IMG/VR virus record: IMGVR_UViG_3300044625_001067
Location: 124,001 to 188,000 of that record
Strand: one strand, 5' to 3'
Length of the DNA: 64,000 nucleotides
Shown piece by piece: positions 13,611 to 61,077 of this stretch (positions within the stretch are counted from its first letter, which is position 1; every line of letters begins with the position of its first letter). Below the pieces are notes generated by a model, which saw only the letters and a list, made by a program, of their open reading frames with translations, was not told where the DNA came from and searched no databases. Position numbers and translations under genes: made by a program.

Positions 13611-13684
13611 TGGCGGACCGGGGAATTGAACCCCTGTTCCTCTGGGTTATGGGCCCAGCGTGACTACCGTGACACTCGTCCGCG
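13611..13684 (-). tRNA. trnfM: initiator-type tRNA-fMet (CAT), C33
   Basis: Unpaired C1:C72, GGG/CCC anticodon stem, loop CC-CAT-AA. Confidence 0.82.
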
Positions 13685-13735: not shown

Positions 13736-13806
13736 TTCCTAAGATAGGATTCGAACCTATATAATCTCCTTCAAAGGGAGGTGTCCTTCCGTTAGACGAC
13801 TCAGGA
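13736..13806 (-). tRNA. trnQ: tRNA-Gln (TTG)
   Basis: TCCTGAG/CTTAGGA (U1:A72), loop CT-TTG-AA. Confidence 0.88.
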
Positions 13807-13881
13807 TCGGCTGCCTTAAGTAGGGAGGCTATTATAGCCCCCTAAGATGAAAGTAAACTCTTGGCTAAGGTAGCAAGGAAA

Positions 13882-14000
13882 GGAGCAAGGTTGGACTTGA
13901 ACCAACGGCTTGCTTTGCCCTCCAGCGTTACGGTCCTTTACCGAGGGTCTCTTGCGAGACTCAGAGGAGGTTGCCGCTCTACCAACTGAGCTACTTGCTC
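13882..14000 (-). ncRNA. tRNA-like RNA A (anticodon arm replaced by branched domain)
   Basis: Perfect acceptor GAGCAAG/CTTGCTC, canonical D and T arms, ~65-nt insert with two hairpins. Confidence 0.8.
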
Positions 14001-14050
14001 TTTGCACCCTGAATTAAGTCAAGGAGCTAGAGTTCTCCGTAAAGAGAACA

Positions 14051-14132
14051 TACCCGCCGGGAGACTCGAACTCCCACGCCTTTCGGCACTAGTTCCTAAA
14101 ACTAGCGTATATACCAGTTTCACCAGGCGGGC
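14051..14132 (-). tRNA. trnL: tRNA-Leu (TAG)
   Basis: GCCCGCC/GGCGGGT, loop TT-TAG-GA. Confidence 0.94.
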
Positions 14133-14160
14133 TTGACTGTGATCCCTATGAAAGGGAAAG

Positions 14161-14232
14161 AGCGAACGAAGGGATTTGAACCCTCGACATTCTCGTTGGC
14201 AACGAGGTACTCTACCGCTGAGTTACGTTCGC
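14161..14232 (-). tRNA. trnG: tRNA-Gly (GCC)
   Basis: GCGAACG/CGTTCGC, loop TT-GCC-AA. Confidence 0.95.
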
Positions 14233-14411: not shown

Positions 14412-14570
14412 TGGGAAATGTTGGATTTGAACCAACGCTCTCTCAACTGATCAGGTTGTGAGCGTGCTGTTACAAAGGCGAAGGTCGGGGATCAATCCGC
14501 CATTCGACACTCGTACTGAAGCACTCACCTGGGTAATGTGCCCAGGGCTCTACCGCTGAGCTAATTTCCC
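14412..14570 (-). ncRNA. tRNA-like RNA B (~95-nt variable region)
   Basis: Acceptor GGGAAAT/ATTTCCC, canonical D and T arms, arm CCTGGG-CACATTA-CCCAGG, large structured insert. Confidence 0.8.
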
Positions 14571-21738: not shown

Positions 21739-23226
21739 ATGACATTTGTGACAGAAAACTTAACGAAGAGTTCTAAAGCTGCTTCGAACGGAAATGGAAA
21801 ATGCAACGATAACTGTTCTGTGAGTGAAGCCGTTGTCTGTGATTTACGCTCTCGCCCGGAACCTCGTCGAATTGACCTCGACAAACTATACGAGTGCGAC
21901 CCGAAAGACTATATTGGCTATTTTGCCGACGAAACCTCTTACGACAACCTTATTCAAGAAGACTGCGACGTTTATGTGGGCGGAGTGAAAGTTGTTGCCT
22001 TTCGTAAGGCACTTTTTCCGAAGCTGCGCGATGGTTCGAAAGGTAGCCCGGAAACTTGGAAATACTTCCGCTGGGCAGCAAGAGACTTGTACTCAGACCA
22101 ACGAGGCCTAGTTGCTGGTAGAGAACTAACTACCCAACTCGAGATAAGGGTAACCAACGGTATTCTAAACTTCTTCAAGAAGGCGATGGCCGGTCAAGTC
22201 ACTGACGTGGAAGAGGCACTGAAAATTGCTTCTCTCTCCCCCGACATGTCAAAGCTCACTGTCCGAGTGAATGATGTTAAAAAGGACTTCCCAGAAATTG
22301 AGAAAGCTTTAGAATCTATCGAGAAGGAACTTCGCAAGAAAACGCTGAGCGAAGAAAGAAAGGTAGAGCTGAAGGAAGCGAAGGGTAGAGAACTTGCGAA
22401 GTGGTTCCCGACTTGGCTGTCTGAGACTTGGAGTGCATCTACGGATAAGGTTTCTGAGGCGAAACGTGCCGACGACAGGTATGTGGGAAAACAATACCGT
22501 TCAAACAAGTGCTATTCCAACGTGATTGGTGCTTTTGATAGGGGTGCACGTAACCCTTACGGTCGTTTGACCGCAACAACTGTAAAAGACTATGAGGGGT
22601 TCGTAAGCCACACGGATATTTATCAGACCGCGTGCTCTGCGCTCAAAGAGACCTTGAACACTCCGGAAAACCCTCGGTGGGACCTCCTTCACGAACGGTT
22701 CAGTAACGTGAAAGACCCGCACTATAACCTCTTCGGTACGGTGTTCACTGCCCTTACGTTAAACTGGAACTTCCGCTGTGCGATGCACTATGATGGAAAT
22801 AACTGCGAAGGTGGTATTGCCGTTCTTACTGCAATTACTCAGGGCGAATATGACGGTCACTACCTTGTGTTCCCTGAAATTCGTTGCGCTTTTGACCTTC
22901 GCGACGGAGATTTCATTGCAGGCGACAACCAGGGCTTGATTCACGGCAACACCGCGATGATCCCTAAAACTCCGGACGCTGAACGAGTTTCGTTCGTTTT
23001 CTATTCACGAGAGCGCATGACCGCTCTTGACGATATGGAGTGTGAGGAGTGCCGCCGAGATTTCATGCGATACGCAGCAGACAACCACAAGGAATACGGA
23101 AAGGGTCACAAGACATGGAATGGTGTCTGGAGCGGAATGTGGAAATCACCGGAATGGATGACGTATAAAGCCGAACACGGCATGGAACGTTGCTCAAATA
23201 CTAACTATTGGGGCACCGATAATTGA
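21739..23226 (+). CDS. 2OG-Fe(II) dioxygenase, TET/JBP family (copy 1)
   Basis: FTALTLNWNFRCAMHYD (HxD), IHGNT (distal His), ERVSFVFYSRE (2OG Arg), YLVFPE; matches the JBP/TET pattern. Confidence 0.85.
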   Translation: MTFVTENLTKSSKAASNGNGKCNDNCSVSEAVVCDLRSRPEPRRIDLDKLYECDPKDYIGYFADETSYDNLIQEDCDVYVGGVKVVAFRKALFPKLRDGSKGSPETWKYFRWAARDLYSDQRGLVAGRELTTQLEIRVTNGILNFFKKAMAGQVTDVEEALKIASLSPDMSKLTVRVNDVKKDFPEIEKALESIEKELRKKTLSEERKVELKEAKGRELAKWFPTWLSETWSASTDKVSEAKRADDRYVGKQYRSNKCYSNVIGAFDRGARNPYGRLTATTVKDYEGFVSHTDIYQTACSALKETLNTPENPRWDLLHERFSNVKDPHYNLFGTVFTALTLNWNFRCAMHYDGNNCEGGIAVLTAITQGEYDGHYLVFPEIRCAFDLRDGDFIAGDNQGLIHGNTAMIPKTPDAERVSFVFYSRERMTALDDMECEECRRDFMRYAADNHKEYGKGHKTWNGVWSGMWKSPEWMTYKAEHGMERCSNTNYWGTDN

Positions 23227-23281: not shown

Positions 23282-23617
23282 ATGGACACAAACAAACAGC
23301 TTAACGGTGGCGATGCGGAGCGGCAAGTTGCCTCGGGGAGTATTGAACCCAGTGAAGCAACAACCGCCATTACAGTGGAACTCCCGGTAAACTTCGCTGA
23401 GGCTTTTCGAGCACTTGCTGAACGAGAGGAGTTGTCGGAGAGTAACCTTATTGTACGATCGCTCGGGCTCTACTCCGTTGCATCTCAAGCCGAGAGTGAA
23501 GGGTACGGACTGACGTTTACTCGTATTGAGGGAACCAACGACCTGACCGCCAAGGAAGCAATTCGCGTCGAAGATGAGCCCGCGTCTAACTTGATCCTTC
23601 CTGGAAATAGGCAATGA
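23282..23617 (+). CDS. ribbon-helix-helix-like protein
   Basis: ITVELPVNFAEAFRALAERE..SESNLIVRSLGLY; similar to the C-terminus of 1535..2704. Confidence 0.6.
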   Translation: MDTNKQLNGGDAERQVASGSIEPSEATTAITVELPVNFAEAFRALAEREELSESNLIVRSLGLYSVASQAESEGYGLTFTRIEGTNDLTAKEAIRVEDEPASNLILPGNRQ

Positions 23618-25101
23618 TCCGAGAGGTAATATCAAAAGAGTTACAGTCAAGGGTCGAACCCTTACAGATTGATAGGGGTGCTCTTGAAAACTGCCCTCGC
23701 AGTGAATATATTGGACAATTCCCTAAGGCGACAGACTATGACCGCGTAATCGATGAAGACTGTGATGTTTACGTCTCAGGTGTAAAAGTCTTGTCCTTCA
23801 GGAAAGCTCTTTTCCCACTTCTTTCCGAGGGTTCTTCCAAACAGAAGGAGACTTGGGACTTTTTCCGAGCAGCTTCAAAAGAAGTTTACGGCACCCAAAG
23901 AGGTGTCGTTGCGGGCACAGAGTTTACAACTCGCCCCGAATCACGCTTAACCAAAGGACAGGTTGCCTTTTTCGCTAGTGCTTCAGTGGGCTTGATCACA
24001 ACGCTCGCTCAAGCGCGAGAAACCCTAGAAAGTTCGGATGAGCTCACCAGCAAGACTCTGAAAATCAAATACGTGAAGAAAGACTACCCCGAACTTGCGG
24101 AGAAAATGAAACCGTTAGAGGCGGAAATTCGCACACTGAACTCCGGAGACCCGAAACCAGAAAGTCTGAGAAACCAGAGAAGAGAACAGCTTTGGGGTTG
24201 GTTCGAACCTTGGTTACTAGAAGTTTGGCTGCCCTCAGAAAACAAAGTAGAAGAAGTTAAAAAAGTTCTAAACACTTACATAAGTTCCCAGTTGAACTTT
24301 AACCACTGCTACAGTAACGTCCTTGGGGCGATTGACCGTGGGGCTAGATTTCCCTACGGTCGTTTAAGCGGAACCACTCAGAGATACTATGAGCAGTTCT
24401 CAAAATACAGAGACATTTATTACACAGCCTGCGAAGGTTTCAGGTACAATTTTCCGGAGACTTGGGTCAAAGTCAAGGAAGTGATTTCGAGGGCTAAAGA
24501 CCCTAACTACAACTTGTTCGGCACTGCCTTTACGAGTGTAACCGTAAATTTCAATTTCAAGACTGCCTACCACGTTGACAAGAACAATTTGAAAGGGGGT
24601 ATGTCCGTCTTAACTGCTTTTACAAAAGGTGTTTATGAAGGTCACTACTTAGTGTTTCCCGAAGTGAGATTGGCCTTCAATTTAAGAGACGGGGACTTCA
24701 TCGTAGGGGATACTCAAACTTTGCTCCATGGTAACAGCCCCATGACAAAACTTACTGAAGATGCTGAGCGGGTTTCTCTGGTTTTCTACTCACGAGAGAA
24801 CATGAACCGATTGGACGATCTTGAGTGCGAAGAATGCCGAAAACAGTTCATGAAGTTTTCACTTCAGTCTCTGAAAGAACGGGGCAAAGATCATAAAGAT
24901 TGGAGAGGTGTTTGGCAAGGTATGTGGACTTCTCAAGAATGGCTAGACTTTAGAAAAGAAAGAAACTTGGAACACTGTTCAAACTCTAATTGGCAGCTTT
25001 CCTCGCCGTACGAGAACGAAGTTACGAAAGAGGTGAAGTTGTTCAAGGATGATCCAGGCGAAGGGTGGAAACTCGTACAAGTGTTTACACAAGATCGGTA
25101 A
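23614..25101 (+). CDS. 2OG-Fe(II) dioxygenase, TET/JBP family (copy 2)
   Basis: [33 protein letters not shown]; collinear with copy 1 along its length. Confidence 0.85.
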
Positions 25102-57423: not shown

Positions 57424-60400
57424 ATGGCAACTTTTTCTTTCGGCACCGGTATAGTCCCCGGAGCACCAGGTACATATATCAACGAGCGTGTTGGAAATGT
57501 AGCTTCCGCAGGTATTGCCTCGTTCAACACAACTTACATGTTGGTTGAAACTGAGGAAGACGTCACTGTCGCACGTTTCCCATTCAACACACCAGTTCCA
57601 GTATCTTCACTAACTGACTACAAAGCCTTGGTAGGGAAAGTTCCCGAAGCCCGAATCCCACTTCTTAGCTACAACTGTGTGAATGCATTCTTTTTGAATG
57701 CGCAAGTTGGCGATCTTCGAGTAGTTCGTGTTGGAACTCCAAACCAGATCGTAGAAATTGAGATTCTTCCGTCGGGCTCCAAGATTAGTAGCACCGGCCT
57801 TCCATCTACCCTTAAAGCTGGCGACGTAGTTTATGCACAGCTCATCTTAAACGGATTGAAGCTTGTTGCTGGAGACGGCTCAAACGGATACACATCCGAA
57901 GGGGAATGGCTCGGCGTGCCAACAGTAATTCCTGTTGATTACATTTCCGGTGACAAGGTCAATAACCGCAAAATTTCTGCCGCAATTTCAAGCTCAATCG
58001 CCGCAGCTATTCAAAGTAATCCAAGTGTAAGCAGTGCCATATTCGTTCGTGACTCGGGCCTCGCAAACGATTTGCTCCCTTCCTCAAACTCGGAAAGCGG
58101 CTACGTAACAATTGCAGCAGCCACCTACGACGGGAGTGTTTCCGTAGTAACCGAGCAGCTGCCAGTTGGAGCGCAAAAGGTCTTAATGCAGACCGCGTAC
58201 AGTATTCAAAATGTCGTTGGCCTTCAAAACAATCTTGAGCGAGTTCCTCAGGATTACGTTCAGTGTATTAACACTGCCTTTGACGGACAAGCAAACCAAG
58301 GGTACCTTGTAACTCCCACCGCGTACGCTCAGTTCGACGCCGAAGGCCGGTCCCTAGTTGGAGCAGCAGCTGCCGCACACTGCCAGGACAACAACTTTAT
58401 GTGGATGGCCGCAGCAGACCCAGGCTCCTTTCTTGTTACCGACGTAAACAAGTACAAAGAGTACACTCCGCATCAGCCCGCAGAAGACCTTGTAACCGAC
58501 AACCTGTACCTGGTTGATAACGCCATCTATCAGTGGAAGGGTGAAGAAGTAACATACGACCGTCTAAAACACCAGACCCTAGTTCCCGGCTACGACCCTA
58601 AGGTTGCTGTTCAGTCGTCAGTGGAGGGAGTAGCGGAGGGCGAAACTGTTGGCCTCCTAGACTTAGCCAAGTTCACAGTCACATCCTCTGCCTCTCTAGC
58701 AAACCGGGGAGTCTTCGCCCTGGGGTCAAGCACAGTTTGGCCGGTAGACTACCAGATTCAACGAGTAACATTGAGTGGCCTTGGCGCGGATTTTCTGCCC
58801 CTACTTCCACTTGGAGAAACCTCAACTGAGGTGTACTTCGTAGCACCCCCACTTTCCAGTGCCCAATACGGAACGTACCCATCAGACGGACAAGTACAAT
58901 ACGTGTATATCGCACAAACTTCTACTCAAGCTGTGTCAATTCTGGCTGAAGTTACAGCCTTGGGAGGTACCAGTGCTGCATTAAACGCACCTTTAACTCC
59001 CTCCGGAGCATTCAGTGTTGCATCCCCAACTTCAAGTACAGCTCAAGCGACTTACACCACACCCCAGTGGGATTTACCTGCAACTATTGAGGGTCAGACC
59101 TCAAACTTGATTCACAATCTGACTGGTGCTCCTGCTTTTGTGAACACTCTCCACTTACCTGGAAGCTTACAGAACACCACCGATGACTACCGCCTATCCT
59201 TTGTAAGCCGCTCACTATTCAACCCCTCAACTGTGCTTTCCTCAAGCACTGTCCCAGGATACACCGGTGCCGCTTCCTTCGGAGTAACATCTCACAAATT
59301 AGTTAACGGACAGAAACTTTTCTTTACTAAGCCCATTCTGGCAGGCGCTGCAACCCTCTTTAAGGCAACAGTTAGAAACAATCTACAAGCTTATTATGTT
59401 AAGGTAATTGACCCCGATAAGTTTGTACTTGCAACTTCTAGCTCCAACTACCTTGCAGGTTCTTACGTTCCCTATCCTGTTGGGATGGTAAGCATTTCCA
59501 CGAGTCCCACCATCTTATACACTTCGGTCCTGGGCGGTGGGTTAACTACTGTAAACCTCTCGGAGTTGAGCGTTGTTCCGTTGGTTCGAGGGAGAAAGTA
59601 CGGACTGGCTTCGGGTACAATCGCAGACCGTGCGTACGATCACAACTTGCTCACGGCGAACGACGATCCAACTGTATCCCTGTACCTGAACTCAAGTCCT
59701 TTAGTTATTGGGTCGGAGCACGTCTACCCGTACGGTGAAACTGCTAACGCGGGGTGGTTACCCTCTTTAGAACTTGTGGGGCCTGGGGAAACCTCAACGA
59801 GTGTTGAGAACTTTCTTTGCACCCCCACTGTGGACCAAAACTTCTCCTCGGAAGCACACATCGTCCCGGTGATTGATCCGATTTTCGGAGGAAACTTCAG
59901 CGCAAGTACCACTGTTGTCCTCGGAACGCTTGCTTCTGTAACGCCATACGTCACCGCTTGTGGTCTCCTCGTTGACAGCACTGGAGTTGAAATTCAAGCA
60001 GCTCTCTCAAAATTGAGCGGAGTTTATTTTAACGTTACGGTTGCACCGGCGAACTCCGTTGCCCCTGACGGAGTTACACGAGTCGTTGTCGGGGACAGGT
60101 TGGCGGTTACATTTGACGGCTCATCCTACAGTTGGGTTGTTGTGCCGGCGAACACCCTTGGCGGTGACTTGAGCACAGTTTCCACTGTTTGTTACGGTTC
60201 ACAAGTTGAATTTGCCCTCACTCCTGAACAAACACCAAGCGCAAATCTGTGGAGATTCGAGACCATCACGTCTACCGAAATTATCGACGAAGCACTTCGT
60301 GGTGTTGGATTTGCAGGCGAACCCCAAGCTGTGTTTATCGAAGCAGGTGTTGACAATGTCAATAGACTATTCGAGGACAGCCAGCGCTACTTCAATGCCT

Positions 60401-61077
60401 TTGGCTTCATCGCTTTCTACGGCCCATACGTGGAGAACTCGGCAGGACAATTTGTCTCCCCCTCACCGTATGTGACCGGTATCGCAGCTCGCCGTTACCG
60501 CTCTGAAGGATTCCAGTTCCCACCTGCAGGTACCAAGTACCAACTCGCAGACGCTGCTGGCGTTCAAATTTCTGTGAACTCGGCTCAGCAAAACTTGCTC
60601 AACCCTGACGGCTGCAATGTTCTTCGTTCCTTGCCAGGGTACCCCAACACTGCGGTGTTTGTCTGGGGTGGCCGCACTCGAATCAAAAAGGCAGTTGCGG
60701 ATCAGCGTAAGTTCCAATTTGTGAACACTCGTGTGATTCAGAATGTTGTTTACGGTTCTCTTCGCAATGCTTTCGACAACCAGATCTTCTCGGTTGTTGA
60801 CGGGTTTGGTATTGTGTTCAACCAAATTGTTTCTATTGGGAACAGCGTTCTGAGCCAGCTTTACCTCTCCGGTGCACTCTTCGGTGCGAGACCCTCAGAC
60901 GCATTCCAAGTGATTTGTGACGAGCGCATTAACAGCGGAGACAACCTCGAGAACGGTGTTGTGTTTGTGAAGGTGTTTGACACCCCCGTACCAACACTGG
61001 AAAGAATCGAGGTTGATCTTATTCGCGTCTCTGTTGGCCAAATGAACAGAGAACTTGATTCTCAGGGCCTAGGTTGA
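57424..61077 (+). CDS. contractile tail sheath protein (unusually large)
   Basis: APGTYINE N-terminus; C-terminal PS..V.GI...GFQFPPAG, N.L..G.NV, VWGGRT, FVNTRVI, FQVICDERIN. Start moved to ATG 57424. Confidence 0.9.
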   Translation: MATFSFGTGIVPGAPGTYINERVGNVASAGIASFNTTYMLVETEEDVTVARFPFNTPVPVSSLTDYKALVGKVPEARIPLLSYNCVNAFFLNAQVGDLRVVRVGTPNQIVEIEILPSGSKISSTGLPSTLKAGDVVYAQLILNGLKLVAGDGSNGYTSEGEWLGVPTVIPVDYISGDKVNNRKISAAISSSIAAAIQSNPSVSSAIFVRDSGLANDLLPSSNSESGYVTIAAATYDGSVSVVTEQLPVGAQKVLMQTAYSIQNVVGLQNNLERVPQDYVQCINTAFDGQANQGYLVTPTAYAQFDAEGRSLVGAAAAAHCQDNNFMWMAAADPGSFLVTDVNKYKEYTPHQPAEDLVTDNLYLVDNAIYQWKGEEVTYDRLKHQTLVPGYDPKVAVQSSVEGVAEGETVGLLDLAKFTVTSSASLANRGVFALGSSTVWPVDYQIQRVTLSGLGADFLPLLPLGETSTEVYFVAPPLSSAQYGTYPSDGQVQYVYIAQTSTQAVSILAEVTALGGTSAALNAPLTPSGAFSVASPTSSTAQATYTTPQWDLPATIEGQTSNLIHNLTGAPAFVNTLHLPGSLQNTTDDYRLSFVSRSLFNPSTVLSSSTVPGYTGAASFGVTSHKLVNGQKLFFTKPILAGAATLFKATVRNNLQAYYVKVIDPDKFVLATSSSNYLAGSYVPYPVGMVSISTSPTILYTSVLGGGLTTVNLSELSVVPLVRGRKYGLASGTIADRAYDHNLLTANDDPTVSLYLNSSPLVIGSEHVYPYGETANAGWLPSLELVGPGETSTSVENFLCTPTVDQNFSSEAHIVPVIDPIFGGNFSASTTVVLGTLASVTPYVTACGLLVDSTGVEIQAALSKLSGVYFNVTVAPANSVAPDGVTRVVVGDRLAVTFDGSSYSWVVVPANTLGGDLSTVSTVCYGSQVEFALTPEQTPSANLWRFETITSTEIIDEALRGVGFAGEPQAVFIEAGVDNVNRLFEDSQRYFNAFGFIAFYGPYVENSAGQFVSPSPYVTGIAARRYRSEGFQFPPAGTKYQLADAAGVQISVNSAQQNLLNPDGCNVLRSLPGYPNTAVFVWGGRTRIKKAVADQRKFQFVNTRVIQNVVYGSLRNAFDNQIFSVVDGFGIVFNQIVSIGNSVLSQLYLSGALFGARPSDAFQVICDERINSGDNLENGVVFVKVFDTPVPTLERIEVDLIRVSVGQMNRELDSQGLG

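What the first reader, a model, noticed from the sequence alone, without database searches (positions are those of the whole stretch)
13882..14000. tRNA-like RNA A: no anticodon; nested helices with GCAA tetraloop hairpin
Minus strand: GAGCAAG TA GCTC-AGTTGGTA-GAGC GGC AA CCTCC [TCTGA GTCTC-GCAA-GAGAC CCT CGGT-AAAGG-ACCG TAACGCT] GGAGG GCAAAGCAA GCC GTTGG-TTCAAGT-CCAAC CTTGCTC C. The GGC/GCC helix abuts the T arm with no variable loop, and no 7-nt anticodon loop exists, so it cannot decode. The near-perfect elbow suggests selection for tRNA mimicry (inference).
Basis: partly seen in the sequence, partly recalled or inferred. Interest (0 to 1): 0.72.

Follow-up and report, generated by a model that had tools for sequence, protein, structure and literature searches.

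The report
Anticodon-less tRNA mimic in phages
A jumbo lake-water phage carries, inside its tRNA gene array, a 119-nt RNA with a normal tRNA body but a conserved branched arm instead of an anticodon loop; it belongs to a previously undescribed family found in at least 24 uncultured phage sequences and probably acts as a non-decoding tRNA look-alike.

Summary
It lies in a 34-tRNA array of a 277-kb uncultured myophage. ARAGORN and default Rfam skip it. With relaxed filters, Rfam's tRNA model scores 45.4 bits with a 59-nt insertion in the anticodon arm.

I found 24 distinct homologs (99-177 nt) in viral and metagenome contigs. I found none in 185,579 cellular genomes or 50,697 GenBank phage records.

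Covariation supports the acceptor stem, inner helix P2 and hairpin 1: 98% of cells pair, against 30-51% in slid controls. The D arm, T arm and a short hairpin with loop (A/G)AAGG are almost invariant.

No single excision gives a canonical anticodon arm in any of 15 members tested. No splice junction and no insert-less allele was found. Acceptor stems and discriminators vary. So it is neither a decoding tRNA nor an intron-containing tRNA gene.

One correction: homologs show a 4-5-nt variable loop, not a GGC/GCC helix abutting the T arm.

Best reading: a tRNA-scaffolded, non-decoding RNA. Its function is inferred, most likely as a decoy or binding module. Novel family; interest 0.68.

The parts
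13994..14000 (-). Acceptor stem, 5' strand (RNA positions 1-7, GAGCAAG)
   Evidence: Pairs with 13883-13889. Six of 7 pairs show compensatory changes across homologs; there are 13 different acceptor stems in 24 members.
13976..13993 (-). U8, A9 and D arm (GCUC-AGUUGGUA-GAGC, with G18 G19)
   Evidence: Invariant or nearly invariant in the family alignment. Aligned to the D arm by Rfam RF00005.
13971..13975 (-). N26 (G) and outer helix P1, 5' strand (GC, followed by AA)
   Evidence: G27 and C28 pair with 13912-13913. The pair changes on both sides in divergent members (helix 3). In L118, L125, L139 and L128, P1 is 4 Watson-Crick pairs.
13966..13970 (-). Inner helix P2, 5' strand (CCUCC)
   Evidence: Pairs with 13919-13923. 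It co-varies: CCUCC/GGAGG, CACCC/GGGUG, CUCCC/GGGAG, CCCAC/GUGGG, UCUGC/GCAGA.
13961..13965 (-). Junction J1 (UCUGA); its first two bases, UC, are conserved
   Evidence: UC (UU in one member) follows the P2 5' strand in nearly all members.
13947..13960 (-). Hairpin 1 (GUCUC-GCAA-GAGAC): variable, dispensable
   Evidence: All 15 short members fold a 5-8-bp hairpin here from unrelated sequences. RNAalifold recovers it with many compensatory pairs. It is absent in L176 and L177. L117 is otherwise about 99% identical to the window RNA but has a different hairpin 1.
13931..13943 (-). Hairpin 2 (CGGU-AAAGG-ACCG): conserved core
   Evidence: Invariant in the members found with it as bait. In five members found without it in the pattern, it persists as a 3-4-bp stem with loop AAAGG or GAAGG.
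13924..13930 (-). Junction J3 (UAACGCU; family consensus N-A-A-N-G-C-Y)
   Evidence: A72, A73, G75 and C76 are invariant in alignment A1. Conserved in A3.
13919..13923 (-). Inner helix P2, 3' strand (GGAGG)
   Evidence: See the P2 5' strand; 3 of 5 pairs have changes on both sides in A3.
13914..13918 (-). A-rich bulge on the 3' strand (GCAAA; family R-Y-A-A-A)
   Evidence: Present in all members as GCAAA, GUAAA, AUAAA, GAAAA, AAUUA or UAAA, between P2 and P1.
13907..13913 (-). P1 3' strand (GC) and variable loop (AAGCC, with C48)
   Evidence: Rfam aligns AAGCC as the variable loop. Homologs with a longer P1 keep a 4-5-nt loop before the T stem.
13890..13906 (-). T arm (GUUGG-UUCAAGU-CCAAC)
   Evidence: Stem invariant in 23 of 24 members. 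The loop keeps U54 U55 C56.
13882..13889 (-). Acceptor stem 3' strand (CUUGCUC) and discriminator C; no encoded CCA
   Evidence: The discriminator varies in the family: U 15, C 6, A 3.

Best explanation
RNA A is a phage-encoded, non-decoding tRNA look-alike. It is one member of a conserved family in which a complete tRNA body (acceptor stem, D arm, variable loop, T arm, hence the L-shaped elbow) carries a structured arm in place of the anticodon stem-loop. That arm has a short outer helix P1, an A-rich 3'-strand bulge, a 5-bp helix P2, an optional variable hairpin, and a conserved small hairpin with loop (A/G)AAGG flanked by conserved single-stranded bases. Shown here: the family exists, its structure is supported by covariation, it is under stronger constraint than neighbouring tRNAs, and no canonical anticodon arm can be made from it. 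Inferred: it is co-transcribed with the flanking tRNAs; RNase P and 3' processing cut it out; it receives CCA (the phage encodes a CCA-adding-type enzyme); and its tRNA body makes it stable, much like the engineered 'tRNA scaffold' used to express foreign RNA domains. The conserved arm would then be the working part, a binding surface. My most likely specific mechanism (about 0.3, inference only) is a decoy or competitor for a host factor that recognises tRNA shape, such as a tRNA-targeting defence nuclease. Such a factor could bind it but not cleave or use it at an anticodon loop.
For: tRNA frame: RF00005 scores 45.4 bits with the insertion confined to the anticodon arm. Family: 24 distinct members from viral and metagenome contigs. 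Model R1 scores members at 56.7 bits or more and ordinary tRNAs at about 50 or less. Structure: on the MAFFT alignment, 98.0% of cells pair against 30-51% when partners are slid, and 0 of 500 shuffles reach the covariation score. On all 24 members the figure is 98.3%, with 16 of 27 pairs compensatory. RNAalifold independently recovers the acceptor, D, P2, hairpin 1, hairpin 2 and T helices. Constraint: 0.91-0.93 identity (hairpin 1 excluded) against a median of 0.66-0.77 for same-anticodon tRNAs in the same pairs of arrays. It is the only sequence shared between G000 and the mini-cluster phages. Not a decoder or intron: no excision restores a cloverleaf. ARAGORN intron calls are inconsistent. 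No joint skips the insert in 3 RNA runs and 1 DNA run, while unspliced full-length sequence sits in RNA-library contigs. There is no RtcB and no splicing endonuclease. No insert-less allele exists. Processing context: it is 5 nt from a tRNA in the mini-clusters. It has no promoter or terminator of its own on its strand. The genome has a CCA-type nucleotidyltransferase and an Rnl2-type RNA ligase. Non-coding: lengths of 99, 116, 117, 118 and 119 nt.
Against: No direct evidence exists for a mature ~119-nt RNA, its ends, a CCA tail or any partner. The RNA-library evidence consists of assembled contigs, which can contain DNA and drop rare forms. The gene is dispensable in some lineages: G002 carries a deleted remnant, and G001, G003 and the nearest isolate S-CBWM1 lack it. 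The decoy function rests on analogy only. No protein co-occurs with it in the flanks examined. Twenty of the 24 members were found using hairpin 2 as bait, which inflates that hairpin's apparent invariance.
Confidence: 0.6

Rival explanations
1. It is an intron-containing (or otherwise interrupted) tRNA gene. The insert is removed by an unknown phage or host activity and a normal decoding tRNA results, as was proposed for oversized tRNAs in Lak megaphages.
For: Oversized phage tRNAs have been read as intron-bearing (Devoto et al., 10.1101/356790). The phage has an RNA ligase. The bases after P2 read C-U-C-N-N, loosely like positions 32-36 of an anticodon loop.
Against: No single excision yields a 5-bp stem plus a 7-nt loop with U33 in any of 15 members. 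The implied 'anticodons' would differ between near-identical bodies, for example CUG in the window RNA and CAG in L117, which share one acceptor stem. That is incompatible with synthetase identity. There is no RtcB, no splicing endonuclease and no group I or other ribozyme hit. No splice joint was found, and no insert-less allele.
Confidence: 0.07
2. It is a dedicated aminoacyl carrier. It is charged by a synthetase that ignores the anticodon and donates its amino acid to a non-ribosomal enzyme, as Gly-tRNA does for phage Mu Mom or for Fem transferases, and it is kept off the ribosome by its bulky arm.
For: The acceptor/T minihelix and elbow are intact. Phage enzymes that use aminoacyl-tRNA exist (PMC13219725). 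The phage has DNA-hypermodification-type genes, namely Tet/JBP oxygenases.
Against: The elements synthetases usually read are not conserved. The discriminator is U, C or A. The first three acceptor pairs vary freely. There is no conserved G3:U70. No candidate transferase was identified.
Confidence: 0.08
3. The arm is a ligand-sensing aptamer or a small ribozyme carried on a tRNA body.
For: It is a compact junction with many invariant unpaired A, G and C bases, as is typical of aptamer cores.
Against: No Rfam riboswitch or ribozyme family matches even at E up to 10. Two members reduce the junction to a simple stem with an internal loop. There is no downstream expression platform.
Confidence: 0.1
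4. It is a decaying tRNA pseudogene with a junk or selfish insertion and has no function.
For: Deleted remnants exist: G002 for A and a 72-nt replacement in sibling B. Several relatives lack it.
Against: The insert is conserved with compensatory changes across phages whose flanking genes are unrelated. It is more conserved than real tRNAs. The insert is never found outside this tRNA frame.
Confidence: 0.03
5. It binds the ribosome through its AAAGGA loop, a Shine-Dalgarno-like sequence complementary to the 3' tail of 16S rRNA, and modulates translation.
For: The loop AAAGG(A) could pair with CCUUU of a 16S 3' tail (established sequence knowledge; the host's own 16S was not examined). The G variant of the first loop base would still pair by wobble.
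Against: The phage's own genes show almost no Shine-Dalgarno use: 2-4% have AGGAG or GGAGG upstream. A 5-6-nt complementarity is weak evidence.
Confidence: 0.07

Closest known systems
Canonical tRNA (Rfam RF00005)
   Same: 7-bp acceptor stem, U8, D arm with G18 G19, variable loop with C48, T arm with U54 U55 C56, location in a tRNA array, no encoded CCA. It scores above the family's gathering score (45.4 against 29).
   Different: No 5-bp anticodon stem and no 7-nt loop. Instead there is a 59-nt structured arm. The discriminator and acceptor identity are not conserved among orthologs.
Oversized tRNAs with 'enigmatic introns' in Lak megaphages (Devoto et al. 2019; 10.1101/356790, PMC6784885)
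   Same: Over-length tRNA-like genes in very large phage genomes that bacterial tRNA finders fail to classify. The inserts are highly conserved.
   Different: Those were read as introns with predicted anticodons, and alleles with and without the insert were aligned. Here no excision restores a tRNA and no insert-less allele exists. No sequence comparison with the Lak inserts was possible because their sequences are not held.
Phage T4 stable RNAs species 1 and 2 (rnaC, rnaD)
   Same: Small stable RNAs of unknown function encoded at the end of a phage tRNA cluster. rnaC has a true T arm and an acceptor-like end, and rnaD is also 119 nt.
   Different: No homology. rnaC scores only 17.5 bits (against tRNA-Sec) and rnaD does not hit the tRNA model at all. 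Neither has the full D/T frame or the conserved arm.
Engineered tRNA scaffold for recombinant RNA (Ponchon and Dardel 2007; from my own knowledge; the approach is discussed in PMC13755472, listed)
   Same: The same design: a tRNA body whose anticodon stem-loop is replaced by a cargo RNA, relying on tRNA processing and stability.
   Different: That is a laboratory construct. This is a natural, evolutionarily conserved gene. The similarity is in how it would work, not in descent.
Other tRNA-like domains: tmRNA, bacterial Y RNA YrlA, plant-virus 3' tRNA-like structures
   Same: They mimic the tRNA acceptor/T-arm elbow to engage tRNA-binding machinery.
   Different: tmRNA lacks a D stem and carries a reading frame and pseudoknots. 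YrlA closes the acceptor end and opens at the anticodon side, and comes with Ro. This genome has no TROVE gene, and ARAGORN's only tmRNA call is elsewhere.

Membership tests
Canonical decoding tRNA | Acceptor stem, D arm and T arm with the elbow-forming bases (G18 G19, U54 U55 C56, G15-C48) | tested here: met
   RF00005 alignment at 45.4 bits. These bases are invariant or nearly so in alignment A1, and G15 and C48 are unchanged in the aligned rows.
Canonical decoding tRNA | 5-bp anticodon stem closing a 7-nt loop with U33 and a 3-nt anticodon | tested here: not met
   Absent as encoded. No single excision creates one in 15 members.
Canonical decoding tRNA | Conserved synthetase identity elements (discriminator, first acceptor pairs) among orthologs | tested here: not met
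   Discriminator U 15, C 6, A 3. There are 13 different acceptor stems.
Intron-containing tRNA (archaeal/eukaryal bulge-helix-bulge type) | Excision restores a cloverleaf, and a splicing endonuclease and ligase are available | tested here: not met
   Excision test negative. No PF01974 and no RtcB in the genome. An Rnl2-type ligase is present.
Intron-containing tRNA (bacterial group I type) | Group I ribozyme core in the insert | tested here: not met
   No Rfam intron or ribozyme hit at E up to 10. The 59-nt insert is far below group I size.
Intron-containing tRNA (any type) | Spliced form detectable in RNA | tested here: inconclusive
   No joint across the insert in 3 RNA-library runs, and the unspliced form is present. 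These are assembled contigs, which drop rare and short forms.
tmRNA | tRNA-like domain plus tag reading frame and pseudoknots | tested here: not met
   ARAGORN tmRNA search gives no call here. The RNA is 119 nt with no reading frame.
Bacterial Y RNA (YrlA) with Ro | Ro-binding stem formed by the 5' and 3' ends, with a Ro (TROVE) gene present | tested here: not met
   The 5' and 3' ends form a tRNA acceptor stem. There is no TROVE gene in G000.
Lak-type oversized phage tRNAs (Devoto 2019) | Alleles with and without the insert in the same tRNA | tested here: not met
   Normal tRNAs with the same D/T frame differ in the acceptor at 3 or more of 14 positions. G002's deletion removes half the tRNA body, not just the insert.
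Lak-type oversized phage tRNAs (Devoto 2019) | Sequence similarity to the published Lak inserts | not testable with these tools
   The Lak insert sequences (their Table S6) were not retrieved.
New family defined here (model R1) | tRNA frame, P1, A-rich 3' bulge, P2, and hairpin with (A/G)AAGG loop followed by N-A-A-N-G-C-Y | tested here: met
   The window RNA scores 137.6 bits. It is one of the sequences the model was built from, so this is by construction.

The most novel reading that the evidence does not exclude
Large freshwater phages carry a whole class of natural 'tRNA-scaffolded' RNAs. This genome alone has four oversized tRNA-like genes of at least three insert types. tRNA processing and stability are used to deliver structured cargo arms. 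The family described here is an anti-defence decoy that titrates a host tRNA-targeting nuclease or another tRNA-shape reader.
Probability: 0.2. Interest if true: 0.85.

Novelty: new variant of a known kind. Interest (0 to 1): 0.68.

Why it matters
tRNA finders skip these genes or call them oddly, so phage tRNA arrays are being annotated with gaps. This work shows that one such gap holds a conserved, structured RNA family that is under tighter constraint than the real tRNAs beside it. It gives a concrete, testable object for the open question of why large phages carry oversized tRNA-like genes, the 'enigmatic introns' of megaphages. It is also a natural counterpart of the engineered tRNA scaffold. 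If it proves to be a decoy for tRNA-targeting immunity, it would add an RNA-based counter-defence to the tRNA arms race between phages and bacteria.

Tried and rejected
- Close relatives by neighbouring protein (386-aa kinase-like ORF): none found.
- Exact 20-mer from hairpin 1: none found. This was later explained by that hairpin's variability.
- BLAST of A and B in four related large records: only frame fragments and the G002 remnant.
- ARAGORN intron mode, and ARAGORN on all deletion variants: too permissive and inconsistent. Replaced by a strict cloverleaf test.
- Known RNA families for the insert: none.
- Co-occurring protein partner: tblastn of flanking ORFs from ten family loci against G000 and array-type loci found only spurious ORFs overlapping the RNA itself.
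- Cellular genomes and GenBank phages: no member.
- 40 portal-related viral records searched with R1: no A-family members. The two hits were the different-insert RNAs L094 and L096, and most records are fragments far from the array.
- Shine-Dalgarno mimic idea: weakened by the lack of SD use in this phage.
- Shared 'AAAGG' motif across the other oversized tRNA-like types (C, D, L092). In type C it lies half in a stem, so it is not structurally equivalent. I do not claim a common motif.
- Resemblances to the sarcin-ricin loop, GTPase centre, SRP domain IV and lambda boxB were considered from memory and dropped as short word matches without structural agreement.
- T4 rnaC and rnaD: not homologous.
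- Complex prediction was not used, because no candidate partner justified it.

Full report
**Observation**

The window is part of a 277-kb uncultured virus record, estimated 98% complete.
- It encodes a tail sheath, a Mu-type portal, a family A DNA polymerase, a gyrase subunit and Tet/JBP oxygenases.
- The nearest cultured relative by portal protein is Synechococcus phage S-CBWM1, at 61% identity. A picocyanobacterial host is possible, but this is only an inference.
- The same DNA occurs in many lake-water metagenomes.
- ARAGORN finds 34 tRNAs in the window and 49 in the genome, covering all 20 amino acids, plus a tmRNA call.

The finding sits in a gap of the array, between tRNA-Leu(UAG) and tRNA-Gln(UUG). 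ARAGORN and default Rfam skip it. With relaxed filters, Rfam's tRNA model scores 45.4 bits. It aligns acceptor, D and T arms and places a 59-nt insertion in the anticodon arm.

**A family, not a one-off**

I first scanned viral contigs for the same D and T arms separated by 40-70 nt. This gave two clear homologs (L093, L095) and three RNAs with the same frame but other inserts. Using the conserved small hairpin as bait in viral and metagenome contigs, and then a different bait that excludes that hairpin, raised the set to 24 distinct sequences of 99-177 nt.

A covariance model (R1) separates members (56.7 bits or more) from ordinary tRNAs (about 50 or less). No member was found:
- in one genome for each of 185,579 bacterial and archaeal species;
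- in 50,697 GenBank phage records;
- in S-CBWM1.

**Structure**

Reading 5' to 3', the RNA consists of:
- a 7-bp acceptor stem, U8, A9 and the D arm;
- one base (position 26);
- P1, which is GC followed by AA here and 4 Watson-Crick pairs in some members;
- P2, of 5 bp;
- a conserved UC;
- hairpin 1;
- hairpin 2, CGGU-AAAGG-ACCG;
- junction N-A-A-N-G-C-Y;
- the P2 3' strand;
- an A-rich bulge (R-Y-A-A-A);
- the P1 3' strand;
- a 4-5-nt variable loop, the T arm, the acceptor 3' strand and the discriminator.

The evidence for this structure:
- On a MAFFT alignment of 15 members, 98.0% of cells form standard pairs, against 30-51% when partners are slid. No shuffle out of 500 reaches the covariation score. 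Six of 7 acceptor pairs and 2 of 5 P2 pairs change on both sides.
- On all 24 members the figures are 98.3% paired, with 16 of 27 pairs compensatory. That alignment was fitted to the model and misaligns the four longest members, so the MAFFT result is the cleaner one.
- RNAalifold, given no structure, recovers every helix except the 2-bp P1.
- Hairpin 1 folds in all 15 short members from unrelated sequences. It differs even between near-identical relatives, such as the window RNA and L117. It is missing in L176 and L177. So the GCAA tetraloop is not the important part.
- Hairpin 2 persists in the five members found without it as bait. There its loop is AAAGG or GAAGG, on a 3-4-bp stem.
- Lengths of 99, 116, 117, 118 and 119 nt exclude a protein-coding reading of the conservation.

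Position 26 is A or U in most members. Members with a longer P1 show a normal variable loop after it.

**Not a decoder and not an intron**

- A strict test deleted every possible single segment and required one base at position 26, a 5-bp stem, a 7-nt loop with U33 and a 4-5-nt variable loop. It fails in all 15 members: at most 3-4 stem pairs, and never at least 4 pairs together with U33.
- ARAGORN's intron mode gives different positions and anticodons for related RNAs.
- Normal-length tRNAs with the same D and T arms are mostly Asn, Lys and Phe. None shares an acceptor stem with the family, so there is no insert-less allele.
- The genome has no RtcB and no splicing endonuclease. It does have an Rnl2-type RNA ligase and a CCA-adding-type enzyme.
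- The discriminator is U, C or A and the first acceptor pairs vary freely. This argues against a fixed synthetase identity.

**Expression**

Three independent lake metatranscriptome runs contain contigs with the full unspliced RNA and its flanks, for example 13783-14000 in X18 record 2. Several neighbouring stretches are uncovered in all three RNA runs, whereas a DNA run covers the region far more continuously. No joint skips the insert in any run. These are assembled contigs from libraries that can contain DNA. Transcription is therefore likely but not proven, and a rare or short spliced form could be missed.

Within the RNA, one DNA-run contig (13841-14000) shows no differences, while the spacer just downstream carries 7 differences in 113 nt between two contigs of the same run. 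No promoter-like or terminator-like site of its own lies on its strand.

**Constraint and turnover**

- With hairpin 1 excluded, the RNA is 91-93% identical between arrays whose same-anticodon tRNAs have median identity 66-77%.
- One subfamily lies in mini-clusters, 5 nt after a tRNA (for example tRNA-Thr, the RNA, then tRNA-Met), among small phage-type ORFs. Those loci have only 0-3 tRNA calls.
- None of those ORFs has a relative in G000. The only shared sequence is the RNA itself.
- The gene can also be lost. G002 has a remnant in which the D loop is fused to the T stem, while a close relative (L095) with identical flanks keeps the intact gene. G001 and G003 lack it.

**Mechanism**

What is shown: a conserved L-shape-competent tRNA body, a conserved structured arm in place of the anticodon loop, and no route to a decoding tRNA.

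What I infer: it matures by the tRNA pathway and gains stability from its tRNA fold. The arm (bulge, junction and the (A/G)AAGG loop) is the functional surface.

The specific role I consider most likely is a decoy or competitor for a factor that reads tRNA shape, for example a tRNA-targeting defence nuclease. The phage is clearly invested in tRNA supply and repair: 49 tRNAs, a CCA-type enzyme and an RNA ligase. This is analogy, not evidence. The rivals are listed separately with the tests that would decide between them.

**Comparison and novelty**

Oversized phage tRNAs were noted in Lak megaphages and read as introns. T4 has two unexplained stable RNAs in its tRNA cluster, but they are not homologous. 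I found no Rfam family and, in seven full-text searches, no paper describing this family. I rate it a new variant of a known kind (tRNA-like non-coding RNA), of above-average interest because it is conserved, structurally defined and directly testable.

Noticed in passing
window 14412-14570 (-): Sibling 'RNA B', 159 nt. It has a tRNA frame with nearly the same T arm as A, an anticodon-like hairpin CUGGG-CACAUUA-CCCAG (CAU triplet but A33), and then about 88 nt of extra structured sequence before the T arm. RF00005 scores 44.8 bits with a 100-nt insertion. Only a near-identical homolog was found (L121). A strain variant replaces 72 nt (14481-14552) with 4 nt. The variant is present in DNA and RNA runs, so it is a genomic deletion and not splicing.
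   Followed up: partly
G000 59854-59965 (-) and 60765-60886 (-), outside the window (locus L091): Two more oversized tRNA-like genes (112 and 122 nt). They are conserved as a pair in related records G001, G002 and G003, with a co-varying internal hairpin followed by a conserved CAGCAA motif. They belong to a different insert family from RNA A.
   Followed up: partly
L092 4526-4641, L094 984-1090, L096 4178-4293 and 4348-4464, L093 1428-1560: Further oversized tRNA-like genes in other phage contigs. Several have the same D and T arms as RNA A but unrelated inserts. This suggests that a tRNA body with a swapped-in arm is a recurring design.
   Followed up: no
L082 (G002:2066-2105): Deleted remnant of an A-type gene: 5' acceptor and D loop joined directly to the T-stem 3' strand and 3' acceptor, apparently through the GUUGGU repeat shared by the D loop and the T arm.
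   Followed up: yes
window 13611-13684 (-): Weak tRNA-like hit (31.2 bits, several mismatched pairs) that ARAGORN does not call. It may be a decaying tRNA gene.
   Followed up: no
window 14000-14161: In another lake strain (DNA run X7) the stretch holding tRNA-Leu(UAG) is replaced by 958 other bases, starting exactly at the 5' end of RNA A. The array is a mosaic with breakpoints at gene ends.
   Followed up: no
L115 and L134, immediately upstream of their family member; L093 6748-6818: ARAGORN-73-nt tRNAs with a two-base 'anticodon' (tg, aa), that is, shortened anticodon loops.
   Followed up: no
L092 4363-4439: A suppressor-type tRNA with anticodon UUA, which reads the UAA stop, lies next to an oversized tRNA-like gene. 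This hints at stop-codon recoding in that phage.
   Followed up: no
window 21739-23226 and 23614-25101 (+): Two 495-aa ORFs lie side by side. The first has a Tet/JBP 2OG-Fe(II) oxygenase domain, which suggests DNA base hypermodification. The second was not scanned.
   Followed up: no
G000 104340-104723 (-), outside the window: ARAGORN calls a permuted tmRNA with tag ANNIVKFERIAVAV. Not verified.
   Followed up: no
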